Shown here: positions 7,727 to 33,400 of the stretch, piece by piece
How the letters are laid out: each line of letters starts with the position of its first letter
Position numbering within the stretch: position 1 is the stretch's first letter
Source of the DNA: Obrimoposthia wandeli
Taxonomy: Eukaryota
DNA: 64,000 nt
Direction of reading: 5' to 3'
Assembly: GCA_977020255.1 (NCBI GenBank)
Contig: CDROCS010001785.1
Location: forward strand, 1 to 64,000
Made by a program: the position numbers and the translations under genes
Notes under the pieces: model-generated
The model's database searches: none
The model's input: only the letters and a program-made list of their open reading frames with translations
Told to the model about the DNA's origin: nothing

Positions 7727-8335
7727 TCAGAGCAATGTCAGTTTCAGAATTACATCGAGTCGACGCTGACCACGCTGAGCCTGCTCAATGGTTTCTTCAT
7801 CCGCTTTGCTCCACTTTATTGCATTTGTGAGCGCTGTCGTTCTTATCTGCTGCTGCTCCGACACGTCTACCTTGGTATCTCTTTTCAGGTCAACATGAGC
7901 ATATCTTGGTTGATATGACGTTCTTCTGACAGTGTAATCTCGGTGATAGTCTGCGGACTGTCTTAATAGAAATTAATATATCAAAAGACTATTCCATCGA
8001 TTAAACAACTTTTATTTTCAATAAATTGTGAATTACAACCTGAATTTACGAGCTCCTGCATTATTAAAATAATCTAAATCATTTGACTCAAAATCTTTTG
8101 GAAGTATATTATAACTATGTGTTTCATCATATTCTTTTCGCCGTTGTTCATTTCCTAAAATATCATATGCAGCCGATATATTTTTATATTCTAAATCATT
8201 TGCGCTATTATTAGCGTCTGGGTGATGCAATTTTGCTTTAGAATAAAACGCTTCTTTTACTTCTTCAGGAGTAGAGTTTGGTTTGACACCTAATGTTTTA
8301 TAATGACAAAAGTTGGAAAATCTTCTGAATAACAT
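7727..8335 (-). CDS. J-domain (DnaJ/Hsp40, type III, DNAJC4/DNAJC30-like) protein, 2 exons, ~176 aa
   Basis: Exon 1 (8335-8040) encodes HYKTLGV..EEVKEAFYSKAKLHHPD..AYDILGNEQRRKEYD with the HPD motif. A 78-bp GT-AG intron (8039-7962) joins in the correct phase to a GC-rich exon 2 (7961-7727) that stays open for 77 codons to TGA. The J domain is certain; the C-terminal structure is less so. Confidence 0.75.
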
Positions 8336-12606: not shown

Positions 12607-15600
12607 TCAGCCGTTACGCGCATCTCCCCACCCAAATCCACCAGGATTGTTGGCGCCAGCAGCCCCATTAACGGCGGCGCCTCCCTCATCCAGCGGCTCG
12701 TAGTTGGGATCGTGTGCTGGACTCTCAAATATCGACTTCCTGTACCGACAATTGTGTACAATCAACCTAAGCAGACCTCAAGAAGCGGAGGGACCTTCTC
12801 AGCTCATAATCTTATAATTCCAGTTCTAGTACGTACTTACATATATTGCACACAATTAAAGGAAAACTTCTGAAGAAGCCTTTTTAACAAACAAACCGCA
12901 GGGTGTCCACGTTCATCAATAAAACTTTGAGTTTTAACACAAACTACAATTTAAAATCTGACAAAATACGAATCGTAATATCAAAGTTAAAATTGTTTTC
13001 TTTCAATTTATTTTCTAATGTTAATTGCTTTAAGCTTCTACAAAAGAGAAGTTACACATCAAGTGGTAAGTTGAACAATTACCTTTTTGGATAAAAATTA
13101 GTTGGTGTACTGTGGAAATGAGATCATAAGAATGTATTAAAAAATCATCCTAAAATCATTAGGAGAGACCCATACTTACTTCACTATTTAAAAAAATATA
13201 TATATTATTAATATGAGAAATTTCATTAAAAACGTTTTTTTTCAATATACATTGTAATTTGCAACAAAATGTCTCCCAAAACCATTACTTTTAATTTATT
13301 GGTTAAAATATATAATTAATTATTTATTCAATATTTAATTATATGAGTTATCTTATGTCTAAAGAATCGTTAGAAAATAAAAATATAACAATTTTACTAA
13401 TTATTAAAAAAGTCTAGTAGTCGACAATCTTGAAAACTTAGTGAGAATTCCTACTATATTCCAAATTGTTCATAAATGAAAGTAAGATATTATCAAAATT
13501 GTATGCACTGCGTTGGTTATCTATGGATGATATTTAGGTTTCCTGTCGTAGCAAAGAGTACTCCTTTGCACAAATTAGAAAATTTTATGAAGTTGATGGA
13601 GAATTACAAAAGAATCAAAGAATGCTAAAGAATTTGAAAGAAGTCTTCGATATCCCTAAAATTAATGGTTTACTATTATAAAATCCAAATTGAAGGTAGG
13701 AATGGATATTGTACTAGAAAGGTGAGATCAGGTTATTTTTTTATATGTACAAAGTTTGTGCATTTTTGACACTCTTTAATTTTAAATTGGGATGTTAAAA
13801 ATAATGTTACAAAAAATTTTAAAATTCGCTAGCTAGTCTTCGTTTATCGATTCAGTCAAAATTACTTTCTATCCATCAACTGAACAGTGAAGTGTACTTA
13901 CAGAAATCTCGGTGTTCGCAGGATCTTGAAGCCATTAGTTTGTCTAGGAAAGACGTCTTCCAAAAAATAGTAGAGGTGGCCAACACCAATTCCTGTACGA
14001 GACAAAGGCATTTCTCAGTAAGTCCATCTGATGATATATTTTAGTTTTGATAATAGGCATCGTGTGTATGTAATAAGTAGGGCACGTTTTTAATGACATA
14101 TCATACAAAGTCATAATTTTTTCAAATTTGTAGAGCAATTTTTCATAAATTCTTTTTAAATTAGTTTATCTTTGCTTTTTCATATTTTGTTTTTATTTCG
14201 ATTTATAAATACATGTAAAATATAATTTTTAATGCTAGGTCATATTTTTAAAAAACTTTATAGGTCACAAATATTGCCCTTCTAATAAGGCTTAAAAATG
14301 TGTAAAATTATTCTTCATATACAAATAAACAAAATGTTATCAATATTATAAAAACTATTTATTTAAAAATTTAAAGAAATTACCGGGTCTACATTAAACA
14401 CCATTTGAATTTAATTTAGATTGCACAGAGTGAACTTGTAACATTATTACGTAGTGGGGTTAAAAAGTCCTTAGACTGATAGAGATGAAAGAAATTCAGC
14501 TAAAAATGTATATTCAAACATGTAACATTTCATAACATATTTACACTTTTACCAGATGGACTGAAATCTCGACGACATGTTTATCGAATTCAGACGGTTT
14601 TACTAGAACATACGGTCACTGAAATCCAGTTTTGATTCAAATATTTTACCTCGCACATCGCTTGGAACGAAATCAATATTAAATATTGAGCGATCCAGTT
14701 ATACAAAATTGCTTTCATCAACTGTTTGTCAAGTTACATGAGAAGAAAAGACTGGTGCATTGTCACGAAGAAGATAGAGGTTTGTGTTTCTCTTTCACTT
14801 TATCAATTAATAAACAATAATAGACCGAATTTATTGTTTCCTCCATGCCATCATTCAATAAGAGCCCAGTACAGTTTTATGCCTTGTTCCGGATCTAAGG
14901 ACTTTTGCAGGCTTCCCAGTTGAAATAACTCATTCTCGTTTGGAGACAAAGATAAAGAAACGAGAAATAAAGCAGTCATTCTTCGTTTCTTGATCACTAT
15001 TTGTAGAAGTTTTCTCATAATCAATTTCGCTTCTTCTTGTCAAAGACACATGTTACTCACGATGAAAGTTTTCGAATAAAATTAGATATTGTTTGATTTT
15101 TTGTATTTTAATACCCTTTTTCTCTATCTTTCTTACTAAAATAAATCGTATACCACGTGTAAATTCAATGATGTTGTACAATGATTGAAGTAAAACAAAT
15201 TTCATTTAGCTGTTACTTGTTATTAATTAAACATTTTAATTTCATTTCTGAGCCTAATGACTTATTGTCATGGAGCCTGGACGTAGTGGACTCACCGATC
15301 ATGTCGATCAGCACGCTGTTGTTGAGCAAGAAAGAGAATCCAAAGAGCACCCAGGGTAAGTACGGCGCGTGGAAGTTGAAGAGCCCGAAGAAGTTCATTC
15401 TGATGTATGGGTTTCGGCGACTCCAAACGTAGACAATCATTAGGGTGAATGCATGGCCGAGAAATATGACTGCAAAGAATGACCCGATGATCTGCAAATT
15501 TAAATGAGAATTCAATGGGCCACGAATAATATTTGAAAATTAATAATGTTATAGAAAGTGTTAAAATAAAAAAAGGAAGGCCACTTACCATCATGAGGGT

Positions 15601-16569
15601 ACCTCCAAATATGAACATGAGAATGAAGTCGGCTTCTTTGGCTCTGAAATGATTCTCCTCGAGCATCCGACAATAGCGATAGATGAAAATCATGTTGAAA
15701 AAGAAGGTGAAGCCTATTTGGCCGAAGAAGCAGAAATTAGTGACCAGTCTCCAGAGCTGCGAAATCGGGAGAACATTATAATTGGTATATTAGTTATAAT
15801 TTATACTGATGCAAATAAGCAGAAAACTATTTATTTAAAAACCAATATCGGTTTTAAAGGAAAAAAGGCATTATTAAGACAATTAACCGAAATTTCAGGA
15901 AAGACCGAAAAATGACGATATTTTTAAATTAACCGAAATATACAGTAATTTTTAAAACTCATTAACATTAGTCAATTTTGCGATGCCCCCTTATCATTGA
16001 AATGTTAACACAAAGAGAGTTTAACAAAGCAAGCAATAAACAGAGAAAATTAGGAAAATTTTAAATTCTCACCTGATAATTCCGAAAGATGAGTGTTGGA
16101 TTGAAGTAAAGATGCAGTGGAGACACGAAATCTAAATGCTAAATTAAAATGAATTAATAAACTGTCAAAATTACTAAAAATTACAAAATAGTAATGAAAC
16201 AAATGATCAAGTTATTTATTAGATTTAATTAAAATAAAATCTCATAATCGAAATAATAGTTCCAGAATTCGCAATGAGATATATTATATGTGTAAATGTC
16301 AAAATAGTTTTTAAACTTTTACAAAAAACTTAATACTGTTTAGGTATTATTTAGTGATTGACAATCATCAGATATAACAATCATATTATAAAAACTAAGA
16401 GTTTCCTGATTTAATGAGATTGTAAAAGAACTAAAATAGAAAAATCATAAATGATTTAGTCAAAAACATTAGTATCACTTACAACCGCGATTGTTGTCAG
16501 GGCACAAATTGTTGTATAAGCTCTCGTCACTGGTGGAATTTGAATATATTCATCATAAATATGATTCAT
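12607..16569 (-). CDS. DERL2: Derlin-2/3-like ERAD membrane protein, complete, 6 exons, 246 aa
   Basis: Exons 16569-16483, 16138-16073, 15756-15589, 15491-15296, 13992-13902, 12739-12607 (741 nt), all GT-AG and phase-consistent. Translation has [55 protein letters not shown] and PGGFGWG. Confidence 0.96.
14545..14730 (+). mobile_element. possible Gypsy integrase remnant in Derlin intron 4
   Basis: FTRWTEI at ~14547 resembles the integrase FTRWPEA motif; the following sequence is frameshifted. Confidence 0.35.
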
Positions 16570-18825
16570 CCTTAGTAGATATGAAACAATAAATAAACTC
16601 TAATCAAAATAAGAATAAATTATACGTAAAGAAACAATTATATCAATAAAATTTAATGACGTATATTTCAAAATCAAGTCTTTTAAGGTTAATTCATTAC
16701 ATAAAAGGCACATGGACTTTTACTCATATGATTGTTTATCTTAATACAGTTCATTTTTAAAATGTCATATATTTAAAAAGAAGATAGGAACATTTTGGCT
16801 AATTAAATTTATTTAAATTTACCACAATAATAATAATTCAGTTTTCCCAAAATAATTATAAAATTTAGGGCAGTTATAAATGAAAAATTCCAAAACTCAA
16901 TTGTAAGTTCATTACACATGAGCGACATTTTCTATAAACATAATGTCCTTCGTGTTCATAAATTTTATATAATCTTAATATTTAATATTCAAAATTTTGT
17001 ATATTTAAAAAAATTATTTAACATTATTAAATTTAAAGACTTACTTAAAATTTTACTTACATGTTGAGTAAATCTAATGTACAAAAAATGTATTTTAGCA
17101 ATATAGCAATATTTTACTTTGAAATTTTACAAAACTTAAAAAAGCAAAAATAACGAGTAAAATAAGATTAATAAAAAATTTATTATTTGTGTATTAAATA
17201 ATTTTTATATGAAAGAAGCACATTATATAAAAATGAAAATAAATACAAATATAGTATACAGACATTTAAGATGAATATTATTTTTATTTAAATTAACCAC
17301 CATAAAATTTCTATTGCTTTTCTATAAAATTACTTTTATAAAAGTGATTGTTTCTTTTACATTTTTTGTTTGGTAAAATTAAAATGCTTTTTTAAGAAGA
17401 AATGATGAAGTTCAAGGCAGTTATGATAAATGAAAACAGATGGCATGAAATGTAAGTAATCAACCAAATTTACGATTCTTAAATTTAATTATTTTAAAAG
17501 TTAAGATCATATGATTAAAGTGATTATTTTCAAAACACCTTATTTTTAATAATCTTTTTTTAAATGTTAATAACCTAGAAAACGAAAATCTTATCTAAAC
17601 TGACGTATAAATTGTACAAAATATGTTATAACATTATTTTTAAATAAAACTTAATTTTTTTATTTTAGAAACGAAATGTCTTGTAAATCAAATTATGTTA
17701 ACTTTTGGAACATGATAGGGATTTAATATTAATTTTATTCGAATAAAATTTTAACAAAAATAAATGTTTGTTTGAGTAAAATAGTGAACAAAAATAAAAT
17801 TTATGCATAAGTTTGTTTAATAACACAAACCGATCATAAAAACTTAACCTTTAACGGGAAAGTTTAGAGAAAAAGTTCATTTTATGTTTTGTAAAGAATA
17901 TTTAAACTTTTCTATTATAATGTTTCAAATTTCTTTCAATAAATTGTAAAAAAAATCTATTATTAACATTTTTAATGTAAATTTGACAAGATGTGGCCTG
18001 TTAGAAAGCAACATACTAACATTCTCAATCGAGTTCTAAATGTAGTAAATTTTTAAGTTACAGTTTCCAAAATGAATCAAAATATTTCTTCAGAAACTAA
18101 ATTTATACTAGAATTCATAATATTTTAAATTATTACTCTTCACTTCGGGTGGATTTTTTTTTTTAAAACAAATGTATCAAGAATCTTCGAAGCACTTATT
18201 TTATTTGTAAATAATTTTTATATTGTACTCAGGGTATTTCTGTTTTTATTCAAATTTAAGTTATTGATGATAATTGCGTTTAAAAATGTATCTTTATTGT
18301 GTGTTAATTTTTGTCTCACATAGAAGAGTATTTTAATTAAGATTGAAATTCATTTAAAAATTTTAATATAATTTAATAATAATTTATTAAAGTAATAAAA
18401 AATAGGGTAAAAGAGATTTCATGTTTATTTTATAAATATTTTCTTTGATATATAAACGCTAGATTTAGATTAATACGTCTACAAATTGAATATAAATATC
18501 AATATAAAATGATAATTTTTGAGATTTACCAAATGGCGCTTCTAAAAGATATACAATTGAGATGCAATATTAAAAGTAAATCGAAACAAATTTTACCATA
18601 AGTTATCAAAATAAACAAAAAAATTCAAGTACAAATTTCTAAAAATAAGAAGTATACGTCAAACATCAGTGGTATACCGAAGAAATATCACGAAGAATAG
18701 CCGCATTCCGCGACATACTGCATCAGGACTTAACAATACGTGTAAGGTAAGAAACCTATATAAATATTAAGTTTAATTAAAAAGTGCATTCGGTGAACAT
18801 TTTTAGAATCATTTTATTTTGGTCA

Positions 18826-18880
18826 GTTCCCGACCGGCTTATCACCGGTTTCGCCCTGCCGGGCGGCTCATCAGGGAAAC
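18826..18880 (-). ncRNA. type I hammerhead ribozyme (HHR1)
   Basis: Minus strand reads GUUUCC CUGAUGA GCC-GCCCGGCAG-GGC GAA ACCGG-UGAUAAG-CCGGU C^GGGAAC. Core intact; stem I 6 bp, stem II 3 bp with 9-nt loop, stem III 5 bp. GUC cleavage site between 18832 and 18831. Confidence 0.85.
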
Positions 18881-19907
18881 GGCAGGTTATCTCTGACTTC
18901 GCAGTACTTATTTCTGCGAAGCCAGAGATACAAGTGACAGTAGAATGTCACTGTTTGAGATTTGACTGCAGATCGACTGGAATAACTTAGTTCAGTTTGA
19001 TCTGCGATCGAAACAAATTTGATAATATGCGAAATAGCTTTGCAGATCGACTGGACTTCGGTTTCTCTCTACCGCCGCTGCCATCTCTGCATCGCCCATG
19101 CATCCTCCTGCTACCCAGTTGTCTCTGCCCCAGTCACACAACTACTACTGTGTCTTCCACCGATTTGATCAATCGAGTGGCTCCAGGGCTGATGGCTGCT
19201 GCACACGCGATGCTTCTCTCCAGTCTCACTATACTACACTCTGTTGCTGATATTATCTCGTGGTTAGCGACAACAACAATGGCGACTATCCTTGTTGTTG
19301 TTGGATCTGGCAATTACAAGCTGCAGCAGTGCCAGCAGTTCTTCAACCGCTAATACGACAACTTTCAAAATGAATCGTCCTTATGGACTCTGTGTGTGTA
19401 CAGCAACTTTAATTTTCTTCCTACTCTCTCAAACACTTACTCTCTGTTCCATCATGCACTCAATCTCTATTCCATCGTACTTGAATTTGCTGCTCTCGCG
19501 ATTTCACATATTCTCTGCTTGTGCAAGTGGTGCCGCATTGGATACAACAGTTTCGTGTTTGTGTGGTGTATTGGGAGTGGTATGCAGTCGGAAGTTTCTC
19601 CTTCTCTCACAGCACTATTATGTGTAGTTCACCTCTTTTCCCTCATCATGTGTTGGTGTGTCACCACAATATAAGGCAGCAATTCTGCAAGGAAAACAAC
19701 AACATGATAATTGCTAAACCTATCAATAACAATGTACAATTTGCATTTTATGATTATTAAAGCCACTGATCACCATTTTTACCATTTCTTGTTGAAGAAA
19801 AATAAACTGAAGACAAGAAATCTTTTATTGTCAATAAACCCAAAAATTTGATAGTATCGTGACACAAAAAACAAAAACAAAAACTATTATTTCAATATAT
19901 ATATCTA

Positions 19908-20769
19908 TGTAAAAGCAATAAAGAACTAGATATATAACATAAATATCGATTGTTTATAATCATTCCAGATACCTACCGACGTAGAATCGATTTGAAGACA
20001 CTGATTCAGAAGTAATACAGTTGATATAGATTTAGAAGCAATACGGATTTAAAAGTCATATAAATCCAGAAGAGATACAGATTCAGATGTGATACGGATC
20101 AGAGCAACACATCGAAGAGAAACCATTATATAAATATCGGCGGATGAATTGAACTAAGTGTAATAAAGAGATTTGAATTCTCAGTAAAAAAGTAATTGAA
20201 TTGTAATCAAGTGTATTGAACCAAGTGTATTAAAGCGATTTAAATTTGAGGAAAATAATTGGAGTATAGTAAAGCGATTTGAATTGTAGATAAGCAATTC
20301 AAATTTAAGTAAAAGGTATAGTGAATTAAAATCATATTTATTGAGATATCGTAAATAAAACTATAAACGAAAAAAAGTGTCGCAAATTGTTATTTAAATT
20401 AATTCGTACCAGAGATTGTCACCCTACTTTTCTGAAGTTGTAGTTGAGAACACATTTGTTTAAGAGCTCCCCACCTTGTGTATTAAAAATTAATTTAGTT
20501 TTACGAAAAGATCGCATGAATTATATTTTGAAAGATAACTAACCCTCTTGGAACTTTCAGACCCACTAACCTACAGGCTAGACGAGAGCTAACAACGTGA
20601 CGGTGTTCCAAGCCACGGTGTATTCAGAGGATTGTTAAGGCCTGATATATTGGAGGAGCATCGTTAATGTCGCTTGTCTGTAGCTTCGTTTCGTATAGTT
20701 TTGGTCTAGCCTTTAACCAGACCATTTTTGAATTGCTCTTCAAACCAGCCTAACCGGTTCAATACTACA
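19908..20769 (+). mobile_element. probable solo LTR
   Basis: TGTA...TACA termini, TATATAAAT at ~20128, and shared start and end motifs with 2144-2760. No matching TSD found. Confidence 0.55.
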
Positions 20770-21141
20770 ACTGTTGAAAATTAAAATACATGCTCACTGC
20801 ATCGGGATCGAGAGGATCGTATGAATATTTGAATTTTGTGAGATAATACTTTTTGATAATAGGCAGTGTTTTGAAATGTTAAAACATCGAAATATTTGAA
20901 TTTTGGTAAAAAATACTTTTAATAAAAAGTAATATTTTGAATTTACTAACAATGATTGACAAGAAAAAATTAAGCTTAAAAAGTATTAAATAAAAAAAAT
21001 CCATTTAAAAAGAAAAGAAAGTTTAATAAGATTTCTTTAATTAGAAAATTAATTGGATGATTTCCTTTATTAGGGAAATTATTTTTGTTAAAATTCTATG
21101 CACTTTGGCATTTTAGAATGTTTTAGTTAAATAAGTGTACA

Positions 21142-21191
21142 GTCCCCGATAGGCTTAACTGGCTTCGCCTTGCCGGGTTCATCAATGGGAC
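21142..21191 (-). ncRNA. type I hammerhead ribozyme, degenerate copy (HHR2)
   Basis: Minus strand reads GUCCCA UUGAUGA ACC-CGGCAA-GGC GAAG CCAGUUAAGCCUAUC^GGGGAC. Collinear with HHR1 but has core substitutions (C3U, GAAA to GAAG, first stem II G to A) and a broken stem III. Confidence 0.65.
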
Positions 21192-22189
21192 AGCAAGCTT
21201 ATCTTTGGCTTCGCGGTGGGCAAAGCACCCGCAAAGTCAGAGATAAAAAGAGAGGATTTTCCCTCTACCATGTGTCGACAAACAGCATCGACACATGACA
21301 ATAATGTGCATACATACACAAACCAAAACACACACATACAAACATTACATACACCCACTCACATCTACTCACATCTATACTCACTCACCTCTATGTTCTC
21401 TCAGCTACTCTCAGTCTTGTGTATGTGTGTGTATATATTTTATGCAGCACTATTTTCCTCTCTGTCGAGATACGATGCTTGTGGACATATGGACAGTGTG
21501 TGCGGTGGATAGAGCTGATGAAATTTTCCCTACTAATCAGTTTTTGAATCGACACCGGTATGTGTGTGCTGCTATATTGACGCGTACAGACAGCTGTATT
21601 TTGTATTAGTTTTCTTCACTTCTCAGTTTCTGTCTCTGTCCTGAGAGCTTCTATGTATTCTGTCTTGTTTTTCTCGATTTCAGGCCATTTTGTCGATCAA
21701 TAGTCTTGAGGGCTTTACTTTTTCTCTTAGCTTATTCTGCTGTTTTTTCCGATCGCTTCGCACTTTTACTCACACTAATGTTGGCTTATATCATTAATAT
21801 TTTAAGTCAACAACAACTCTTAATTTTAACCCCAAAAATGTATTATTTAATTTTTTTTCTTCTTTTAAGGTTATTATCAGGATATTTTAATTACTATAAA
21901 TATCTTTTATTTATTTCACTTATTCTTATTGCTCTCTGTATGGACCTAACACTATTTATCATTTATTTTATGAACATTTGAAATCACAGCAACTTCCAGA
22001 TACTAAAACTGCAAGTCTCATACCTAGTTTTGATATGGAGCTTAATATTTTTTGGGTATCTAAATTCGTTGTGAAATTTAATGGAGATAAAATATGGTAT
22101 AACATTTATTTGGAATATCAGTAATGTAACAGGAGTCAGCAAAAATAGTGTACACCGCATGATGAGATAAAATAATTAATGAAATATTA

Positions 22190-22236
22190 AATATATATAT
22201 ATATATATATATATAAATATATATAAATATATATAC
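22190..22236. repeat. (AT)n microsatellite
   Basis: Nearly uninterrupted AT dinucleotide run. Confidence 0.9.
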
Positions 22237-24183
22237 ATCCATGCTCATGCTATTATACATGCTATTGTAAAAAGCAATATATCTTTTCCAATTCTCTATA
22301 TTCTAAATTATTGTAATTATATTTTCATTAATACACTGCAGTACTTAAACTTCTAAATGATTATTTGAACACATTTATTTCAACATATTTGTTTATATAA
22401 AATAAATGATACCTATCTATATGTTGTTTATTTTAAATAAATCTATTAAATAACCTATATATATTTTGTATAAAACTGTCATAAAACAAAAGTATTTTAA
22501 TTGTTTAGAATATTTTGTTTAATGTTCTAAGTAGTTGATTTTAAATAAAACACTAATCATTTTGAAAAATTATTTTTAATATAATACATCACATAATGAG
22601 TGTGATAGGTTTTTTTCAGTGTTTGATTTTTTGTTGTATTTTAAAATATTGTTTTAACTAAAAAGTTGAATATTTTTATAAAATTAAAAGAACATTAATA
22701 TTTTGATATTTTAATAAGAAATAATACGTAAGTTTTCTTAGTTTAAAAAAAATTAAAAATCTCCAAGAAGTTACTATGACATATACATCTAATAGTTTTA
22801 TGGCAGGTGACTAAGGAAATTAAATGCAAAATTAGTTTATGCTTATTTGAAAAAGTATGATATATTTATTATATGGTTCAACTTGATATCCATAGAAAAT
22901 AATTCTGCGGAAAGTGCGAGAAAAAAATTTCCTTTAGAAAATAATAAGGAAAATCGATAAATGTTTTATTGATTATATTTTTCAATTTCACATTTGCAGC
23001 ATCCTTAGTTGTTTCTTGAGTTAATATATCATTTTCAAAGCATTGTAACATGAAGTTAATTACGGTGATTGCACAGGACAGGGAACTATACTTGATTTGC
23101 ATACCAAAGACTCTTTGAAAGAAGTATTTAAAAGTATTTTGTTATAGTACTTTTATACTGAAGAATTGTTCAAAGAAATTTTGTTTATTTCTAAAATTAT
23201 GATAAATCCAATCTTGTTAACACACATTAAAAAATATGGTTCATTGTATACGTTTTGCAAATTTAAACAAGAAATTAATTGACATGCATATGTTGTGCTT
23301 TATTAAATATAAAAATACAAATATTGAAATATAATTTTATTATACACAAAAAAATGACCAGAGGGCTAACAATTATTAGAGTTACTAAAAATATTTTGAC
23401 GATGACAATGGTGATAAAATAAAATAATAAAATAATCAAAATTAAATAAAAATGGAACTGATTTTGAAAAATGATATAGTTTATGCTGGCATACCATAAT
23501 TTTTTATTACCGAAATTTCAGGATTTATATACTCTCTCATTTACACGCTGTGCCCGGGTTTTCCTGGTGGGGCTTTTGATTTACATTAGTTTAATCTAAA
23601 TGGGGTTTGTCTATCAATATTAATACTTAATTAGATTCTATTGGGTAACCTGTTAGTATTTGCCTGCTAGTATTGCAAAGTTTTATCTACTTCTTATACT
23701 TTAGGACTTTTTTACCCAAATGTGTGATTTTGATGAGCCGTACATATTTTAATTGGAATTAATTTATGCTTTAAATTGATGTTTTGTTAATTTATGTGCG
23801 ACTTTTAGATGTCTAAAAAGTCTTCATTAAAGTTTAATTAGTTAACGTTTTAATTAACAAAAATCACATTTTTGTAGATCATTCTTAATACAAAAGTTGA
23901 AAAACTTTCGAGCATACGTGAAATAAATCGTTTTTTTATTGCTAATTTATGTGTAGTTCAGATTTTTAAATAAGGTCTTCCTTTAAAAAGTTATTCGTAA
24001 AAAAATGATTTCTACATAAAATGAATTAATATTTTAAACCTATTTTTTTTTGTGGGTCACTAAGTTACTTTTTAATTAGTAGCTTTGTTGGGTTATTAAA
24101 TAAAAATAATTAATTTTTGTCAATTTAAATTGACATTTAATATTTATCAAAAATGCCCACAATTAGGGAGGTTTTCAAGTTCA

Positions 24184-24233
24184 GCCTCCGACGGGGTGGT
24201 CCCGTTTCGCCCTGCCAGGCTCGTCAGGAAGGC
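24184..24233 (-). ncRNA. type I hammerhead ribozyme, canonical (HHR3)
   Basis: Minus strand reads GCCUUC CUGACGA GCCU-GGCA-GGGC GAA ACGGG-ACCAC-CCCGU C^GGAGGC. All core nucleotides present and all three helices paired. GUC cleavage site between 24190 and 24189. Confidence 0.9.
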
Positions 24234-24618
24234 GTCGAGGAAGGTGGTTAGCGGAATGGATTTTTTTCTCGCGAGTGTAAATTGACATTTAATTTTTATG
24301 ACTGGAGATTACTGCCCAGATCTATCTGCTGCCAATGCGAATATGCACATGTGTTTGTGCTGAAACCCATATGCAGATATGCACACACATGCGGAGGTCG
24401 TCCGACTGATACAATAGAGCATTGGATTCTACAAATTCTGAAGCCAGTGCATGTGTTTCTTGACATTTGGCGAGGAGTGGGCGATTTCGATAATCTGAAC
24501 GTCCTGACTGTGTGTCGTCCCTGATTTTCTCGGTTCATGTGTTTAACAAGAATATAAGCTAAAACACAATTTTTCTAAAACACAACTTTTCAACCTGAAA
24601 CAGAATTTATTTGAACCG

Positions 24619-24976
24619 CAGAAAAATATATTTGAAACTATTTATCCACTTCTCACAGAAAAATATATTTGAAACTATTTATCCACTTCTTAAAAATATA
24701 TTTGAAACTATTTATCCACTTCTCACAGAAAAATATATTTGAAACTATTTATCCACTTCTCACAGAAAAATATATTTGAAACTATTTATCCACTTCTCAC
24801 AGAAAAATATATTTGAAACTATTTATCCACTTCTCGCAGAAAAATATATTTGAAACTATTTATCCACTTCTCGCAGAAAAATATATTTGAAACTATTTAT
24901 CCACTTCTCGCAGAAAAATATATTTGAAACTATTTATCCACTTCTCGCAGAAAATTTATTTGAAACCATTTATCCA
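24619..24976. repeat. 37-bp minisatellite, ~10 copies
   Basis: Unit CAGAAAAATATATTTGAAACTATTTATCCACTTCTC(A/G), head to tail with no spacers. One unit is shortened and the last is degenerate. Confidence 0.95.
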
Positions 24977-26454
24977 ATTATATGAAAGTTTGTTGAGTTG
25001 CAATTGTTGGATTTCCCGTCCAACAAATTTAAGTTATTAACAGCTTTATATTTTTTGGATTATCATTTTAATTTTTTTGTTACTTTTATGTTTATTTAAG
25101 TTTAACTTTAACACATATAATGAAATGTTGGTTAAATTAATTAATAGTTATATAATATTAAATCGAAAATTTAAATATTTTATTTATTTATTCTAATCTT
25201 TCTAAAATTTTTCAGATCTTCAATTGTTGAAATGTTTACTGCCCTCTTCCATTTCATAAATTATTTGCGTAAATTTATGTATTCAATGTTAAATAAGTTA
25301 GAATATACAAAGTATTTATTGAATTAGTTTGATTTTGTAAACAATTTGAAAAACACACCTTGAATGAATATAATATATTTTATTTAAATGACCTTTTTAA
25401 ATACTATTAGATAGCCATGTCTTATTGTGTTCATTTATAATTTGAAACATTAATTTTTATTTAGTAACTTTAATCAATTATTTTTTTTGAAACATTATTG
25501 CTTTTGGTTTCATTATTTTGTCAAGTTCCGAATGAATCAAGTATGCAATTGTTTTTATCTTTTGTTAAAACGTGTTTTTAATTAGGTTATAAACACTCAG
25601 CCTGGTTAGTGAAGCATTTTATTTAATTTTTAAAAATTGTTTCTAAATACATAGTATATTATTTAATTATAACTAATATTTGTCTTTATATGATAAAGTG
25701 GGGTTTTGATGATTTGTTTAACTTTGTTTTAGTCTGTAAATGAATATTTAGAAAGGCAAAATGAGTTTATCAACTGTGGGACTCTGACTTGTGATTTGAG
25801 AAGGTTTATAGATATTTCGTTATGAATGAATATGAAAAGTTTAAATATTTTTCATCTCCATCGTCACTCGATGAATTTCTGCGCTTATTATCATTTAAAA
25901 GTAAAAAAATGATTTTTAATATACATTTCGGTAATGTTGGAGCAAGTTCTGCCGATATTCGCGTATCTTGCGAGGGTTGAGTAGGCTGTAGCTCTCTTGG
26001 TTTCAGTTGAGCCTCCAGGGACATCTCACAGAACATATGCAACTGTTCCTGTGTGTCTAGGGTTGTTATTTCACTGCCACTGTCCTCTTCACGCTGCTGA
26101 TCTATGTCGCAAATCAAGTTTTAGCAGAAAAAACACTTTCATGGACTCGATGAAGCCCCAAGGAGCAAATGAGCCAGCAACAACACATCGGAATAATAAC
26201 ATGAACAGCAGCATATTTGATTAGCGCTGATGTATGATGCATCTGTGATTGATTACTCAAAAGCGCGTCCAGTTTGCTGTCACTCTTCTCCCTTAATCTT
26301 TCATTTTGTTTTCACCGCTGTTACAGTTTCTTCCATCCAAAGATAAACCGTTGACCAATCCTAAGATGCATGCACGTGCTCACTGCACCAGGCTCGATAA
26401 GATTGTATCCATAATTGGGCTGTTGTGAGAGAATTCATTTATGATAATAATTGG

Positions 26455-27420
26455 GAGCTGGAAATCAATTCTGGTATTGGTCGGTAGCCAATGGAGCTTC
26501 ATTAGATGTACAGTTGTAATAAAACTTTTGTTTATTTTGAATATAATTCTGTCAGTTTGGTTTAAAACTGTTTACAAGCGATATAATTGAGGCAGGATTT
26601 TACACATAGAATTTATACAGAGAATTTAATTTCTTTTGAAAGTGTTGAAGACCTTAAAGTCACATTTAAGAAATTTTTGGATATTCTAGTTAATAGTAAG
26701 ATACAAGTTTATACAAAAACAATACATTTAACTATGATTTATTCAAAAGCACTTCCTGTTTTCCATTATTCTTTGTAATGTTTTCTGAACAGTAAAGTTT
26801 TCAACAATGTTACAGTTTCTTGTCTAAGTCGGACAATTGTTGTTAAGATTTGAAGCATAATTTGCGATCGTATAAATATTTGAGCTTTGTGAGAGAATAC
26901 ATTTTTGATAAAAACATGATATTGAAATCAATTCTGGCCAATGGAGTTTCATTAAATATTCACTTGTACTAACAATTTTCTCTAATTTGAATATAATTCC
27001 GAAGGCTTTGTTTATCATTTTGTGTAAGTGATTTAATTGATAAGCTGGAATATTGAACAGTAAAGAATTTTGAAAATCCAGCCATGATGTAATAATCGCA
27101 TGTGTTAGCAGTTTAGTTGTCACGAGTAGTAAAGGATTTTCTTATTAGTTAAATCCTTAATATGACCTTTGCTTTATTTTGCTTTTTTCTTTAATACTGT
27201 TCTTAGGAACTCTTTATCGAGCCAAAGTAATAGATCCAAATAATATAGCCACAGTTTTATTTCAAATGTCTTCATTTCATCCATGTAGCTATTTCATATT
27301 CATTAGAATCACAATCAACACAAAGTTGTGTGTCATCAGCATAAGGGGAGAAATGAATATTATATTTCTTATTAATCGCTGCGATTGACGAAATATAAAT
27401 CGAAAATAGGTATTCAGAAT
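26455..27420 (-). mobile_element. L2/CR1-type LINE, reverse transcriptase C-terminal fragment
   Basis: HFSPYADDTQL (YADD at 27343-27332), then TKLLTHAIITSWLDFQNSLLFNIPAYQLNHLHK..LHWP, and a second LMKLHWLPTNTRIDF at ~26500. Confidence 0.85.
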
Positions 27421-29949
27421 AGGAAGTTTTACACATTAAAGCCGACCTTTACCGATATATTATTTTTCCACAAGCATATTCAGTCATTTCTGTGATGTAC
27501 TAAATGTAAATATATTGACTTACTACTGTATTCCGCAACCGGGTATTACTGTATATTAAATGTCAATGGTAGATTGTAGGGTGGGATACTGGTGTATATC
27601 TTAAGCAACGATAGATGGAAGATCTGTGTCGTGTCGGTACCGCTCACGATCATGTTTGCGAAGAACTTATGTATTTTATATTTGAAGAGAAAAATCTACG
27701 CCTACCTATTTTATCTCTCGCTAATAAATTCATCGTCAAATACGCTTGTTAGAAGATGTAAGACGAGTATTCAATACAAATTTTTATCCTTTAATTGTCA
27801 GCAAACAATCTCGAATATACACATCCCCCTTTTAAAAGCTTTACGGCCATTCTAAGAACATTTTATAAACTCTTTTTCTACCAATAAGTCCACCTCAAGC
27901 TACTCATTTTTTAGATTAATTTAGATTGTATCTGTTATAGTATGAAATTGCCTTTGCATAGGAACGCGACGCTGCAAAGCATGTTGAAGCTACATACTCA
28001 ATTCTTTTACCAAATTGGTTTCAAAGCTCTTTTTTATATCCATATGTTTGATTCTTTAAGCTCCAACATTTTCAGATTTTCAGTCAATTAGTAATGGTTC
28101 TTTCATCTTGAGTTTTGATGGCATATCCTTTGAACTTATTGTTGTAACTTCAGAGAGGTCAGAGATATCGCCAAAAATGGATTCACCAAATATGTGCTAT
28201 TACAAAATTAGTATTTATCAAATAAAACGATTAAAAAATTCAGATAATAAAATATTGCCAAATTTCAAATGGATTTTCTAACGTCACTCACTTAATATCG
28301 AATATGCCGAGCAATTTTTATAATGCAAAAGCTATAGGGAATCTAAAGAGCGATCGTTTACTTACTTTAGAAAGAGAAGAATCCCATCATAGAATCACAA
28401 CACTGAAAAGACCCCTGCACAATAAAGGGAAAAATAAACTTACTGCTTGTGTTATTTTTCACCTCAAAACCACTAAGTTAACTCAAGATTCAATGGACTT
28501 AAGAAACTATTTCAGGAAGCTATCGAAGCATCACAATTTATGTTCAGACGATTTATTATTTTTCAAATAAGCGCAAAATTAGTTTGAGAAGTTAAAATAC
28601 ATCACCACTGAGATAACTACAATGCTAATGCGTCCCATTATTACTTCAAGACTAGATTTTCAAACATTTTTACTGATTAACATTCCAGTTAATAAATTGA
28701 ATCACCGTCAGAATTATATTCAAATTAAAGAAAAGTCCTGGTACAACTGAACATTCTACGAAACTCCATTCAAGATTCTTCATATTATCAAAAGTGTATT
28801 ATCTCACAAAAGCACAAAAAATTATATGACCTTCTCGAACCTGGTGCAGTTAGCATCTTATCTTATCTGCAGATTGGCCAACAATCTATCAATGAATATC
28901 ACAAACTATAACAGATTGGAAAGTTTCAAGAAGCAAGCGAAGACCTTGTTATTCAGAAAATATCACGAAGAACAAGCGCTCTTGAGAAATGAACCATAGA
29001 TTTGATTTGTTGGATATTAGTGCTATATTAAATATATTTGAACACCCAAACTTTCAAATCATCGTTTTAGCACCTCCTTTAAATTTGTAGAAAGTTGAAG
29101 TGGGTTATGTCAACTGCTTCAGGATGTTTTTCACAAGTTTTCTTGAACCACCAAGATTTGAGTGTAACTCCTGAAAAACCTAACCAAAATCGATAAATTG
29201 TAAGGTAATGTGCCAAAAGGATAAATTTATAAGACTTGTTTCACCTAGACTATCAAAATACTTCGAAATACCCCGAAAAAATGACCGAAAGTTCTAGGAT
29301 TCGCTAATGTTATAGAAACTCGGCTCTTCAAGATGTGTAGTGCCAGATTGTTCATTGCATTGCCATCAAGCATAGAAACTCCAGAAATACCGACACAGTG
29401 TTCAGCGTCTCTGGTCAGCTACTGGCGATAAAGTATGTTATGCTGGTGTAGAAATAAAATTGTTAACTAAAGTTGAGTTTGTCAACTATAATAGTCGTTA
29501 ATAAATCCATAAGTTTGTTAGGAGAGTAGCTGTTTGCATAATTTGCAAAAGTAACCCAATCGTTTTGGCTTCATTGTGGGAGTGAAAAGTATGTCTTGGG
29601 GTTGAACCACATTTTTGCCCGTTGACTGAATTCTGTCACTCACAAATCGGTCTCAGTCAAGTTGAGTTTACTTCTGTGCATATAGGAGAAAATCAATGAA
29701 TCATATCAGTCAGATTAATATCCATGTTTCATGGTTGCGACTTATCGATCGAGTTCACGAGGGAGAAAATTGGGATTGCTTATTTGGGGAATTTCCTGTT
29801 TCGGCGACTGAGATGCCTATCTCTCCCCAATACACACATACATCCATTGTCGATAGCTCTACATGGTCACAATATCGATATTTTGAAGATATATTCTTTC
29901 TTTTTTAGTATTTTTCATATTTTTTAAAACTAGCACTTATAACTACCAT

Positions 29950-30445: not shown

Positions 30446-33400
30446 TCTGGTCAAAATATGTAGTCGTTTTCTGGTTATATTGTATGTAACGCAATTACAT
30501 CATTCCTCAGTATTTCATAAAATTTCTATTTGCACAAATATGAACAACTTAAGGGAAGTTATCGAAGTAGAAATCAAACATCTCTACATTTCCAAAATAC
30601 TCTCAGAAATAATTGTCACGATGATGTTAAAATATTAGCTCTCCAAAATAGATTTATTCTTCATATTCAACATTCTTAACAATTTTAACAAGCTTATAGA
30701 GGCATAATAGAACTAACAATAATTATTAATATTGTATCGACTGTTTCTATCCAATACTATTAGTTTGTTGCATAATTAATGTCGGTTTTTAATAAATAAA
30801 ATACAAGATAAATACACACATTAAAGCAATAATTATTCAAAATAAGCCCTTCTCATTCTATACATTTTTTCCAACGTTTTATAAGACATTCGAAACCTGT
30901 TTGAAAAACATTTTGATTTTTGGATTTGATGAAGTTGCATATCTCCGACCTTTTACTTTATATTATCCAATTTCTTCCCATCTAGAAATTACGATAAAGG
31001 CTTGAAAAGATGAATCGAAATATGTGGTCTGGTATTTTCGTGTAGCAAACTGGGTCCTTCTGATTAGCTAAACTGGGTTTTAATAAAAATGTTTTGATGA
31101 CATGTATCAATTTTGTTGCAATATGAGTCTGAATTTATTGTTTCGCCAGCATTCAAAAAGCAATGGTGTATAATACCCGACATAAACCACCTGTAATTGC
31201 TTCATCCGCTTTACGTCACTGATGTAAACGTCTTCTATTGTATTTTATTCACTTTTTATCACAAGCTATCAAACGTTCTAACAAACTACTTTCAATTTGT
31301 CTAATTATTTTAATTTTTTTAATTTCTGATTATTCACGAGGTACCTATTTTCTAACTTTTTCACCATATGCATTGCAAACAAACGACACGTACTACAAGG
31401 ATTTGATTTTACAGCCTGTCTCAGGTCGTCTTTATTTAAGGTAATGGGAGGTCCAAGACTTACTCGATCTTCTAAGTCAGTGATGCCAGACTTTAGCTTT
31501 TCCAATCTTCTTTGAGTGATTCTTTCATTAGAAGAACCTTCGCCAAATGCTATCTTTATATTTCTGAATGCTTATGCTACAGTGTGACTTAATTTATATT
31601 CATATAAAGATAATTAATTTCTGGTTTCAATCCAAACCAATATCGGAGTCACTTTTCTAATATAAAAATTATAAAATTGTTCTATTTACCATATAAATTT
31701 AATGAATACGCTATAAATGAAGAATGCAGATACAAAAGTTGATTCATTTAAGCTGGTATAAAGATGTATTGGAATTCTGGTATTGAAAACCGAGATAAAT
31801 TACGCAACAACCTAAAAGATAATTCCATAATATTGTATTAAAGTCTGGATATAACGGCTGGGTAAGCGTTTTTGATCACAGCTACAATTTGGCTTAATGT
31901 AATTGAATTCCATCATGCAGTCATCGCATGAGACACTAGTAAATGTTGTATTTTAAATTACACATTCAAGAAGATGATGAACAGATTTGTATAGATTATA
32001 TCAGTGAACGTTTTGATTGAAATGTCAAGTAAATGTGAATTCGAACGTGATTTCTGACCACCATAGATAGTCGCAGTCAAATATGCTTATTCAGAAACTG
32101 TTGTAGTTGAGCTGCAAATTGCTAACAGATGTTTATAATTCTTTGAGATTGCAGTGTCCATATTTTCGACGAAAGAATGAAACAAATTGAAAGTTAAACG
32201 TATTTCTAAAATTTATAAATTATGTCAAAATTTATAAATTATGTCAAAATTTATGCTGAAAATAATTACAAAAAATTATTTTAGCCAACATTGATCAATA
32301 TCCCAACCAACACAACACATTGCCAACAAAGGGACGCACTAGTAGACTGGAAGCTCACCCATCCCAGTCCAATAGAACGTGGAACAAACGTTTTTCTAGC
32401 CCGAAAGTTTCATATTGACTCCTCAAGTCCGGAACTGGCATTGTACAATTTGTGCATAAAGGAACCAGCGATGACAAGGTAACGTCAAAACTGTACTAGC
32501 ATATGGGAACGAAGAACACGATGAGACCAAGTTTAAAAGATGCTCCATAGTCCATATAGTAACGAATATTCTTAAGGTTGTTGTTGAGATAAGATATATA
32601 TTCCTATTCTTGAAAATAGCATGTTGCATTCAATTCTCATCGGTCAATAGGTCAAAAGTTTCTATCCATATAAATGACAAACACAATTTTCCACTAGCAT
32701 GTTCAACATTTTCTTCTAACATTTTCCGAAACATCCGAGCAAACTCTGGAGTACTGAAATGATGCAGTATTTCGCCTATACTTCGTTGTGTATTATATAT
32801 ATATATGTGTATTATATAAGATAAGATAACCAAATCGTAGGTGTCACTTGAGCAATGTTGCTTCTCTTCCAGAATCACATTCAGAAGTTCAGGACCGACT
32901 CATTAGATGATTCAAAAGAAGACATTAGTCTTTTGGAGTTCTACGAATCGGAGGGAGGGAATGAATACAAATAACGTAGCACAACTGATATGAATAACAA
33001 TGATCGATAATCAGCCACATTTACGAGCCCTTTTATGTTCTTTCCCTTATTGATTTCATCATGCCTTAAATTAACGTTTTATTTTACCATCTTATGGCTT
33101 TGCTGAGTCATTTGTCACATTGATTTAAATCTGGTGAATGTGCTGATTGGATTACTTTTTCAATTTTTCTGCCATTGAAGAAAGCGGTTGGGATATTCGC
33201 CGAATGTTGTCATGAATTGCCATGTTGGGGAAATTAGGAATTTTTGTTGAAAATTTCTACCTAGATATTTAAACAAAATTGCGGTAATATTCATTTTTAA
33301 CAGTCTCATATTCAATTATCCATCTTCCGTTAACTTTATTTTGAGGTACTGAATCTGAGAAAAAATGCATTCTTTAACTTTAGTAACAAATTCCTCATTT

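What the first reader, a model, noticed from the sequence alone, without database searches (positions are those of the whole stretch)
18785..24560. Cluster of three co-oriented, sequence-divergent hammerhead ribozymes upstream of Derlin
Seen: three minus-strand motifs with the same type I layout within 5.4 kb. Stem I changes sequence but keeps pairing (GUUUCC/GGGAAC, GUCCC/GGGAC, GCCUUC/GGAGGC). Stem III is ACCGG/CCGGU in HHR1 and ACGGG/CCCGU in HHR3. All three keep GGCA in loop II and UG(A/U) right after stem I. Known: type I hammerheads in animals are usually tied to Penelope-like elements, retrozymes or satellites, as short near-identical tandem units. Here the spacing is 2.3 and 3.0 kb, the copies are divergent, and I found no RT or GIY-YIG remnant. 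Inference: these are either relics of an undescribed non-autonomous ribozyme element or host-retained RNA-processing sites. Cleavage at consecutive sites would release ~2.3 and ~3.0 kb RNAs with 5'-OH and cyclic-phosphate ends, which could circularise.
Basis: partly seen in the sequence, partly recalled or inferred. Interest (0 to 1): 0.9.

Follow-up and report, generated by a model that had tools for sequence, protein, structure and literature searches.

The report
Hammerhead ribozymes in mobile-element relics
Two intact and one decayed self-cutting hammerhead RNA motif sit upstream of an animal Derlin-2 gene, but they look like leftovers of a ribozyme-carrying jumping-element family and not RNA-processing sites kept by the host.

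Summary
HHR1 (18826-18880, minus) and HHR3 (24184-24233, minus) are complete type I hammerheads. A strict descriptor finds exactly these two in 64 kb, against about 0.01 expected. Rfam's type I model aligns end to end at both sites but scores below its gathering threshold because helix III is unusually long. HHR2 (21142-21191) is a dead copy, with two core mutations and broken stems II and III.

All three lie in intergenic DNA, 2.3 to 7.6 kb upstream of the Derlin-2 start codon. Each ribozyme sits about 45 nt from one conserved edge of a GC-rich, non-coding island in roughly 20% GC DNA. HHR1 and HHR2 share a roughly 135-nt module (tail, HHR, long hairpin). The distal parts of the islands look weakly homologous. 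HHR3 is bracketed by a unique 22-nt direct repeat, the mark of a 130-bp retro-insertion.

My reading is three diverged copies of one ribozyme-bearing non-coding mobile-element family. Whether the carrier is Penelope/retrozyme-like (my preference) or an LTR with an antisense ribozyme is not settled in this window. No RT or GIY-YIG remnant is present. Nothing supports host function or 2.3 and 3.0 kb circles.

The scan's unchecked notes report many hammerheads on other pieces of this genome.

The parts
18826..18880 (-). HHR1: intact type I hammerhead. C17 is at 18832 and the 3' product starts at 18831. Stem I 6 bp, stem II 4 bp with a 3-nt GCC insertion, stem III 6 bp with a 5-nt loop.
   Evidence: Strict descriptor hit. 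RF00163 full-length, 23.2 bits, E 8.5e-4. The minimum-free-energy fold is the three-way junction. The catalytic fold is within 3.6 kcal/mol of the MFE.
18881..18884 (-). UGCC immediately 5' of stem I, complementary to loop II GGCA: a candidate pseudoknot contact.
   Evidence: It lies in the same position (6 nt before CUGAUGA) as loop I UGCC in prokaryotic type II hammerheads that share this stem II. HHR2 has UGCU, which still pairs. HHR3 has CGAC, which pairs at only 2 of 4 positions.
18888..18930 (-). 17-bp hairpin just 5' of HHR1, part of the module shared with HHR2.
   Evidence: Hairpin plus HHR fold: -52.7 kcal/mol, z -5.3. nhmmer self-inverse hit, E 3.8e-4. The HHR2 copy keeps the hairpin with two mismatches.
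18785..18825 (-). 3' tail of the HHR1 unit, ending at the conserved ...GCA edge (reads TGC on the plus strand).
   Evidence: Homology with the HHR2 unit runs 18801-18933 vs 21111-21248 (67% identity, E 1e-10; E 7.7e-10). By eye it reaches the TGCA at 18785 and 21099.
18934..19675 (-). Island 1 body: GC-rich (40-49%), non-coding. Its distal part 19392-19675 is weakly homologous to island 3.
   Evidence: Composition. No Pfam domains. Single-diagonal alignment with 24271-24558 and reciprocal best hit in the window. nhmmer top hit, but E is only 1.1.
21142..21191 (-). HHR2: decayed copy with UUGAUGA, GAAG, and stems II and III disrupted.
   Evidence: Sequence. All six unpaired cells in the structural alignment belong to it. 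It fails the strict descriptor.
21099..21248 (-). HHR2 unit (tail, HHR, hairpin), homologous to the HHR1 unit.
   Evidence: (score 39.5 vs null 8.9; 0 of 200 shuffles reach it).
21249..21850 (-). Island 2 body: GC-rich (36-43%), non-coding.
   Evidence: Its distal part 21664-21804 has its only nhmmer hit in island 3 (24450-24577), at E 1.4.
24184..24233 (-). HHR3: intact type I hammerhead. C17 is at 24190 and the 3' product starts at 24189.
   Evidence: Strict descriptor hit. RF00163 full-length, 22.2 bits, E 1.7e-3. The catalytic fold is within 1.1 kcal/mol of the MFE.
24148..24277 (-). 130-nt insert carrying HHR3: 44 nt upstream, the ribozyme, then a 36-nt tail (42 nt from the cleavage site to the insert end).
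   Evidence: Bounded by the 22-nt direct repeat.
24126..24147 (.). Left copy of the 22-nt direct repeat flanking the HHR3 insert (putative target-site duplication).
   Evidence: 21 of 22 identical to 24278-24299. Apart from a tandem array, it is the only short-range direct repeat of at least 22 nt in the window.
24278..24299 (.). Right copy of the 22-nt direct repeat.
24300..24560 (-). Island 3 GC-rich part. It lies outside the direct repeat and is weakly homologous to the distal parts of islands 1 and 2.

Best explanation
The three motifs are diverged copies of one family of non-coding, ribozyme-bearing mobile elements, left as relics in the intergenic DNA upstream of Derlin-2. Each copy has a conserved terminal module on the minus strand: an optional long hairpin, a type I hammerhead built to work as a monomer (5-6 bp helix III), and a tail of about 45 nt ending in ...GCA. 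This module is joined to a GC-rich non-coding body of 0.3-0.9 kb. I infer that the element is transcribed in the ribozyme's sense. The hammerhead would then cut the transcript to give a 2',3'-cyclic phosphate and a 5'-OH end. Copies would be made by a reverse transcriptase supplied in trans through target-primed reverse transcription, as proposed for Penelope-like elements and the animal non-LTR retrozymes derived from their pseudo-LTRs. HHR3 would be a 130-nt 5'-truncated copy of this kind, HHR2 a copy that has decayed in place, and HHR1 and HHR3 still competent. Shown here: the motifs, the decay of HHR2, the shared module, the direct repeat, and the absence of coding capacity. Inferred: the sense strand, the type of RT, and cleavage itself. 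That these are mobile-element relics and not host sites I hold at about 0.85. The specific Penelope/retrozyme-like mode I hold at about 0.5.
For: Two strict hammerheads against 0.01 expected. Full-length RF00163 alignments. Compensatory changes in stems I and III between copies. HHR2 has lost core positions and two helices, so this locus is not under purifying selection. HHR1 and HHR2 share only a bounded module of about 135 nt with unrelated flanks. HHR3 is bracketed by a 22-nt direct repeat that is unique in the window, which is too long for an LTR integrase and typical of target-primed insertion. The tail after the cleavage site is 42-47 nt in all three, and all end at a shared TGC edge. 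The ribozyme lies near the 3' end followed by a short tail, the layout reported for PLEs (PMC8557442). In animals most PLE-type hammerheads are dispersed single motifs ascribed to truncated copies (PMC4209133), and monomer derivatives of non-LTR retrozymes are dispersed and related to PLE pseudo-LTRs (10.64898/2026.07.22.740005). PLEs tend to insert beside earlier copies (PMC6765202), which would explain three co-oriented copies within 5.4 kb. My own estimate, not a tool result: about 0.02 for three random positions in 64 kb falling within 5.4 kb, times 0.25 for shared orientation.
Against: No RT or GIY-YIG remnant in the window. The ribozyme architecture (long helix III, short helix II) differs from the minimal hammerheads of animal PLEs and the short-helix-III motifs of animal retrozymes (PMC4209133, PMC7229834). 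HHR1 and HHR2 show no convincing target-site duplication. If the GC-rich part right of HHR3's repeat is truly homologous to island 1, the 130-nt insert must be nested in or next to a related copy, which adds an assumption. The minus-strand RNA is not more structured than the plus strand. Other unchecked notes on this genome tie hammerheads to LTRs, and none mentions GIY-YIG.
Confidence: 0.5

Rival explanations
1. The GC-rich islands are solo LTRs, or LTR fragments, of Gypsy-type retrotransposons oriented on the plus strand. The hammerhead lies antisense near the 5' edge of U3. It would cut antisense transcripts, not the element's own RNA.
For: Read on the plus strand, all three modules begin with TG (TGCATT, TGCACT, TGCCCA) at the point where homology starts. 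Island sizes of 0.4-1.1 kb suit LTRs. Island 1 has a TATA-like AATATAAG at about 19668 followed by AATAAA at about 19800 and 19833 on the plus strand, an order compatible with U3-R-U5. Unchecked notes from other windows of this genome report hammerheads antisense in LTRs. I took those as a lead only.
Against: With the left end fixed at the conserved TG, no right-hand CA gives a perfect 4-6 bp duplication. Other TG...CA plus 5-bp candidates occur by chance at 25-60% of random positions, and their ends are not homologous between islands. There is no internal Gypsy sequence, PBS or PPT next to any island. The 22-nt repeat around HHR3 starts 6 nt outside the TG and cannot come from an integrase.
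Confidence: 0.3
2. The three copies arose by old local duplication of a single ribozyme-bearing segment (period about 2.3-3 kb) and then diverged in place, not by independent insertions.
For: Same strand and regular spacing (2316 and 3042 nt). HHR1 and HHR2 share a module. (TA)n tracts lie at nearly the same offset (about 2300) from both. Weak collinear hits occur between islands.
Against: Outside the 135-nt module the island 1 and 2 bodies align no better than unrelated controls (z 2.6-2.8 vs up to 2.3). At that level of divergence two intact ribozyme cores would not survive by chance. HHR3's unit has its own flanking duplication.
Confidence: 0.1
3. The ribozymes are kept by the host as RNA-processing or insulating sites upstream of Derlin-2. 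One version cuts read-through transcripts. Another releases 2.3 and 3.0 kb RNAs that circularise.
For: They are co-oriented with Derlin-2 and lie 2.3-7.6 kb upstream of its start codon. Two cores are intact and carry compensatory changes.
Against: HHR2 is dead, so the proposed 2.3 and 3.0 kb products cannot form. The interval contains LINE debris, a tandem array and 33 poly(A) signal hexamers on that strand. The compensatory changes are between family members and say nothing about selection at this locus. No conservation data are available.
Confidence: 0.05

Closest known systems
Hammerheads in the pseudo-LTRs of Penelope-like elements (Cervera and de la Pena 2014, PMC4209133; Craig et al. 2021, PMC8557442)
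   Same: Type I topology. The ribozyme lies near the 3' end, followed by a short tail. Most genomic copies are dispersed, single and highly variable, with no ORF beside them. Copies cluster in one orientation.
   Different: Animal PLE motifs are 'minimal', with helix III absent or 1-2 bp and helix II 6-8 bp, so they need to dimerise. Here helix III is 5-6 bp and helix II 4 bp, closer to the monomeric variants of fungal and protist PLEs. No RT or GIY-YIG ORF and no pseudo-LTR pair is present in the window.
Animal non-LTR retrozymes and their monomer derivatives (Cervera and de la Pena 2020, PMC7229834; Li et al. 2026 preprint, 10.64898/2026.07.22.740005)
   Same: Non-coding units with a type I hammerhead. 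Family lengths of 51-972 bp are reported. Monomers are scattered in intergenic DNA. They probably depend on an RT supplied in trans.
   Different: Retrozymes are defined by short tandem repeats (about 170-400 bp), and no tandem is seen here. Their hammerheads have a short helix III and loop-loop contacts. The units here keep a fixed terminus about 45 nt past the cleavage site, which does not fit copying from a circular template at arbitrary start points.
Prokaryotic and phage hammerheads with a stem I / stem II pseudoknot (Perreault et al. 2011, PMC3088659)
   Same: Same stem II and loop II sequence (GCC..GGCAGGGC), found in 57 metagenome loci. In HHR1 and HHR2 the loop II GGCA can pair with UGCC or UGCU placed 6 nt before CUGAUGA, the geometry seen in the type II motifs. 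Long helix III.
   Different: Those are mostly type II, or type I beside phage-type integrases, in prokaryotic DNA. The similarity may be convergent. HHR3 lacks the complementary tetranucleotide.
Plant LTR retrozymes (Cervera et al. 2016, PMC4918200)
   Same: Non-coding, GC-rich units of about 0.6-1 kb that carry a hammerhead and are mobilised in trans.
   Different: Plant retrozymes have type III hammerheads in both LTRs, in sense orientation, with PBS, PPT and 4-bp duplications. Here each island has a single type I motif, and no LTR pair, PBS or PPT was identified.

Membership tests
Hammerhead ribozyme, type I (Rfam RF00163, clan CL00010) | Conserved core CUGANGA ... GAAA ... UH | tested here: met
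   HHR1 has CUGAUGA/GAAA/UC and HHR3 has CUGACGA/GAAA/UC. HHR2 fails, with UUGAUGA and GAAG.
Hammerhead ribozyme, type I (Rfam RF00163, clan CL00010) | Three helices around the core, with helix I open (5' and 3' ends in helix I) | tested here: met
   15 of 15 pairs form in HHR1 and HHR3. Helices II and III are closed by loops.
Hammerhead ribozyme, type I (Rfam RF00163, clan CL00010) | Score at or above the curated gathering threshold (34 bits) | tested here: not met
   23.2 and 22.2 bits with full-length alignment. The penalty comes from the long helix III insert. Nothing scored at gathering level in the whole-window scan.
Hammerhead ribozyme, type I (Rfam RF00163, clan CL00010) | Self-cleavage 3' of position 17 | not testable with these tools
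   Needs in vitro transcription and a cleavage assay.
Penelope-like element | ORF with a telomerase-like RT and a GIY-YIG endonuclease | tested here: not met
   No Pfam RT or GIY-YIG in any frame of the islands or between them.
Penelope-like element | Pseudo-LTRs: partial tandem copies flanking the ORF | tested here: not met
   The islands share only the short ribozyme module. There are no long direct repeats.
Penelope-like element | Hammerhead near the 3' end, followed by a short tail | tested here: met
   Tails of 42-47 nt from the cleavage site to the conserved edge in all three copies. Compared with the description in PMC8557442.
Animal non-LTR retrozyme | Head-to-tail tandem repeats of about 170-400 bp, each with a type I hammerhead | tested here: not met
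   Spacing is 2316 and 3042 nt, with no tandem unit. The copies could only be monomer derivatives.
Animal non-LTR retrozyme | Expressed as linear and circular RNA of unit length | not testable with these tools
   No expression data are available.
Solo LTR of an LTR retrotransposon | TG...CA termini with a 4-6 bp target-site duplication | tested here: inconclusive
   All left edges start with TG, but no perfect duplication pairs with them. The other candidates are at chance level.
Solo LTR of an LTR retrotransposon | Homology to the LTRs of a full-length element with gag-pol | not testable with these tools
The only gag in the window (about 62.8-63.5 kb) has no hammerhead nearby.
Schistosome Sm-alpha type SINE-like hammerhead elements | Internal pol III promoter (A and B boxes) in a unit of about 330 nt | tested here: not met
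   No B-box match in or near the islands. The three window matches lie elsewhere and are at chance level.
Host-conserved hammerheads (HH9 and HH10 type) | Fixed position in a host gene, conserved across species | tested here: inconclusive
   The position is intergenic, not intronic. HH9 scored only 18.9 bits against a threshold of 52. Cross-species conservation could not be examined.

The most novel reading that the evidence does not exclude
This animal carries a so far undescribed family of 0.4-1.1 kb non-coding composite elements. Each has a conserved terminal module with a monomer-type, bacterial-like type I hammerhead, stabilised by a pseudoknot in some copies, joined to a variable body. 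The elements insert into or beside one another at a preferred site, and are mobilised independently of canonical Penelope ORFs. They would be an animal counterpart of plant retrozymes. The 22-nt duplication at HHR3 and the weaker 9/10 repeat at the homologous position of island 1 would then mark same-site insertions.
Probability: 0.25. Interest if true: 0.65.

Novelty: new variant of a known kind. Interest (0 to 1): 0.35.

Why it matters
Hammerheads in animal genomes are currently sorted into three kinds: minimal dimer-dependent motifs of Penelope-like elements, short-helix-III motifs of tandem retrozymes, and a few conserved intronic ribozymes. The motifs here fit none of these neatly. They look able to cleave as monomers, they resemble prokaryotic hammerheads in stem II and loop II, and they sit at a fixed distance from the end of a non-coding unit. 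If a genome-wide census confirmed a distinct carrier, it would add a ribozyme-bearing element type to animals and give a tractable case for asking what a terminal ribozyme does for a retroelement. For the Derlin-2 locus itself the finding is probably of no consequence.

Tried and rejected
- Rfam at gathering score on the whole window found nothing. The permissive 8.5-kb scan gave only a weak HH9 hit for HHR1. Short-segment scans were needed to see RF00163.
- The public metagenome scan with the stem II pattern returned 57 loci. These were prokaryotic or phage hammerheads, mostly type II, and the type I copies sat beside phage integrases. None informed the animal carrier.
- Species identification failed. 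The exact-protein look-up of a DnaJ ORF found no record. The Derlin exon search found only 55-77% identical animal Derlin-2 proteins from many phyla.
- Solo-LTR ends: the 1300-bp and 1274-bp TG...CA candidates with 5-bp duplications looked attractive because the HHR sits at the same offset in both. Their ends are not homologous, and such candidates arise by chance at 25-60% of random sites.
- A viroid-like or retrozyme-like compact RNA fold is not supported. The z-scores are similar or better on the opposite strand.
- Truncated autonomous PLE: no RT or GIY-YIG in any frame.
- tRNA-type SINE: no B box.
- Tandem duplication of a 2.3-kb segment: the island bodies align no better than controls.
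- A block of similarity just after the modules of islands 1 and 3 ('block A'), seen by eye, was not a top hit in the window-wide test and was dropped.
- Same-site insertion in island 1: a 9/10 repeat lies at the homologous position, but about three such matches are expected by chance in the search space. I kept it only as an idea.

Full report
**Observation**

Three hammerhead-like motifs lie on the minus strand at 18826-18880 (HHR1), 21142-21191 (HHR2) and 24184-24233 (HHR3).

I wrote a strict type I descriptor: CUGANGA, stem II of at least 3 bp, GAAA, stem III of at least 4 bp including the A15.1-U16.1 pair, UH, and stem I of at least 4 bp. It returns exactly HHR1 and HHR3 in the 64-kb window. 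Random sequence with the window's dinucleotide content gives 0.01 hits per 64 kb, and sequence with the islands' own composition gives none.

Rfam found nothing at gathering score. On short segments its type I model RF00163 aligns end to end at exactly these coordinates: 23.2 bits (E 8.5e-4) for HHR1 and 22.2 bits (E 1.7e-3) for HHR3. The shortfall against the 34-bit threshold comes from helix III, which holds 13 and 9 nt where the model expects 4 and 2. The missing gathering-score hit is therefore not a refutation.

On a structural alignment of the three copies, HHR1 and HHR3 pair at all 15 positions, and four pairs carry changes on both sides. With three sequences this has no statistical weight (65-69 of 500 shuffles do as well).

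HHR2 has U at core position 3 and G at 15.1, and it supplies all six unpaired cells. It is a dead copy.

Products would start at 18831, 21147 and 24189, giving spacings of 2316 and 3042 nt. A covariance model built from the three copies finds no fourth copy in the window.

**Setting**

tblastn with Derlin-2 homologues places the gene's exons on the minus strand from 16569 down to 12610. HHR1 is therefore 2.26 kb upstream of the start codon, and all three motifs are intergenic, not intronic.

The background is about 20% GC. Each motif sits at the low-coordinate edge of a GC-rich island: 18700-19750, 21100-21850 and 24100-24550. No reading frame in or between the islands matches RT, GIY-YIG or any other Pfam domain. 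The long plus-strand ORFs there are a by-product of a pyrimidine-rich strand.

The species could not be identified. The nearest Derlin-2 proteins are only 55-77% identical and come from many animal phyla.

**Anatomy of the copies**

- HHR1 and HHR2 share a bounded module: a tail of about 45 nt, the ribozyme, and a long hairpin (17 bp in HHR1). It spans 18801-18933 vs 21111-21248 at 67% identity (E 1e-10). By eye the similarity extends to a TGCA at 18785 and 21099.
- HHR3 shares only the ribozyme with the other two. Its unit ends at a comparable distance from the cleavage site (42 nt), and the plus-strand edge again reads TGC.
- The distal parts of the islands look distantly related. The stretch 19392-19675 aligns with 24271-24558 on a single diagonal at about 65-69% identity. 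Each is the other's best hit in the whole window on both strands.
- With nhmmer, the top hit of island 1's distal part and the only hit of island 2's distal part both fall in island 3's distal part, but at E of about 1. The scores alone are not significant. The coincidence of position, strand and order is what suggests real homology.
- The middle parts are unrelated.

**A discrete insertion at HHR3**

HHR3 is bracketed by a 22-nt direct repeat with one mismatch, at 24126-24147 and 24278-24299. Apart from a 37-bp tandem array, this is the only short-range direct repeat of that length anywhere in the window. It delimits a 130-nt insert: 44 nt, the ribozyme, and a 36-nt tail.

A 22-bp duplication is not what an LTR integrase makes. 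It is what target-primed reverse transcription makes. A copy that keeps the 3' end and lacks the rest is the usual 5'-truncated product of that process. HHR1 and HHR2 have no comparable repeat.

**Tests of the LTR reading**

Unchecked notes from other windows of this genome describe hammerheads lying antisense in LTRs, so I tested that reading here.

- With the left end fixed at the conserved TG, no right-hand CA gives a perfect 4-6 bp duplication.
- Two candidates of 1300 and 1274 bp with 5-bp duplications place the ribozyme at the same offset, but their ends are not homologous.
- TG...CA pairs with a 5-bp duplication occur at 25-60% of random positions in this AT-rich window.

What remains in favour is the TG start of all three modules, and a TATA-like element followed by AATAAA on the plus strand of island 1. 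The LTR reading is therefore not excluded, but it has no positive support in this window.

**The ribozyme itself**

Helix III of 5-6 bp should allow cleavage as a monomer. That differs from the minimal motifs of animal Penelope-like elements and from the short-helix-III motifs of animal retrozymes, both of which need dimers (PMC4209133, PMC7229834).

A scan of public metagenomes with the stem II pattern found 57 loci, nearly all prokaryotic type II hammerheads. The few type I copies lie beside phage-type integrases. In those motifs loop I carries UGCC placed 6 nt before CUGAUGA, complementary to loop II GGCA. HHR1 has UGCC in the same place and HHR2 has UGCU, which still pairs. HHR3 has CGAC, which pairs at only two of four positions.

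Pseudoknots between stems I and II are documented for about 40% of hammerheads of all types (PMC3088659). This is therefore a known kind of contact, plausible for HHR1 and unproven.

**Explanation**

The decay of HHR2, the bounded shared module, the insertion signature at HHR3, the lack of coding capacity and the intergenic position all point to mobile-element relics, which I hold at about 0.85.

For the mode of spread I prefer a Penelope-like or retrozyme-like route in the ribozyme's sense orientation (about 0.5). The reasons are:

- the terminal position of the ribozyme followed by a short tail (PMC8557442);
- the 22-bp duplication at HHR3;
- the precedent that most animal PLE-type hammerheads are dispersed single motifs from truncated copies (PMC4209133);
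- the finding that retrozyme monomers are scattered and derive from PLE pseudo-LTRs (10.64898/2026.07.22.740005).

The tendency of PLEs to insert beside earlier copies (PMC6765202) would explain three co-oriented copies within 5.4 kb. My own estimate, not a tool result, is about 0.02 for three random positions in 64 kb falling that close, times 0.25 for shared orientation.

Against this reading stand the atypical ribozyme architecture and the absence of any PLE ORF.

**The host-function idea**

The proposed 2.3 and 3.0 kb products need cleavage at HHR2, which is dead. A transcript spanning HHR3 to HHR1 would cross LINE debris, a tandem array and 33 poly(A) signal hexamers on that strand. Neither island is more structured on the ribozyme strand than on the opposite strand. 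Conservation across species could not be examined. I put this reading at about 0.05.

**Verdict**

These are real hammerheads: two probably active and one dead. They are best read as relics of a ribozyme-bearing non-coding element family whose carrier type remains open. They are a variant of a known kind. The interest lies in the monomer-type, bacterial-like ribozyme and its fixed terminal position, not in the Derlin-2 neighbourhood.

Noticed in passing
window 24548-25028: Tandem array of about 12 copies of a 37-bp unit directly next to island 3. The most regular copies (24692-24954) are 97-99% identical.
   Followed up: no
window 26827-27436 (minus); also 20788-20944, 26374-26550 and 26866-27000: LINE-type remnant with a YADDTQL reverse-transcriptase motif and a C-terminal region. 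A stretch of about 130-180 bp is repeated at 20.8 kb, 26.4 kb and 26.9 kb. A LINE fragment therefore lies between HHR1 and HHR2. Pfam did not score the short pieces.
   Followed up: partly
window 12610-16569 (minus): Derlin-2 gene, six exons mapped by tblastn. The nearest database proteins are only 55-77% identical, so no close relative of this animal was found.
   Followed up: yes
window 62773-63516 (plus) and 60117-60533 (minus): A gag-like ORF with a CCHC zinc knuckle (CFCCGEKGH) lies next to exons of an MFS/SLC22-like transporter at 57417-57809 and 61936-62232 on the minus strand, so it may sit within that gene. Pfam gave Sugar_tr, E 5.8e-4, for the 61.9-kb exon only. No hammerhead lies nearby.
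   Followed up: partly
window 43331-43567 (plus) and 8036-8398 (minus): Phospholipid scramblase exon (Pfam E 3.6e-12) and a DnaJ-domain ORF (E 9.7e-18).
   Followed up: partly
window 31308-31571 (minus) and 51582-51839 (plus): Short ORFs that look by eye like mariner/Tc1 transposase fragments. Pfam did not score them.
   Followed up: partly
L012, L019, L026, L053, L057 (metagenome loci): Type II hammerheads repeated at fixed spacing (about 441 nt, or 1.27-1.29 kb) on short contigs, as expected for multimeric, circular-RNA or prophage arrangements.
   Followed up: no
window 17743-17763 and 21079-21099: A 21-nt inverted repeat, 95% complementary. One arm abuts the conserved edge of the HHR2 unit and the other lies 3.3 kb away. 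Its meaning is unknown and it may be chance in AT-rich DNA.
   Followed up: no
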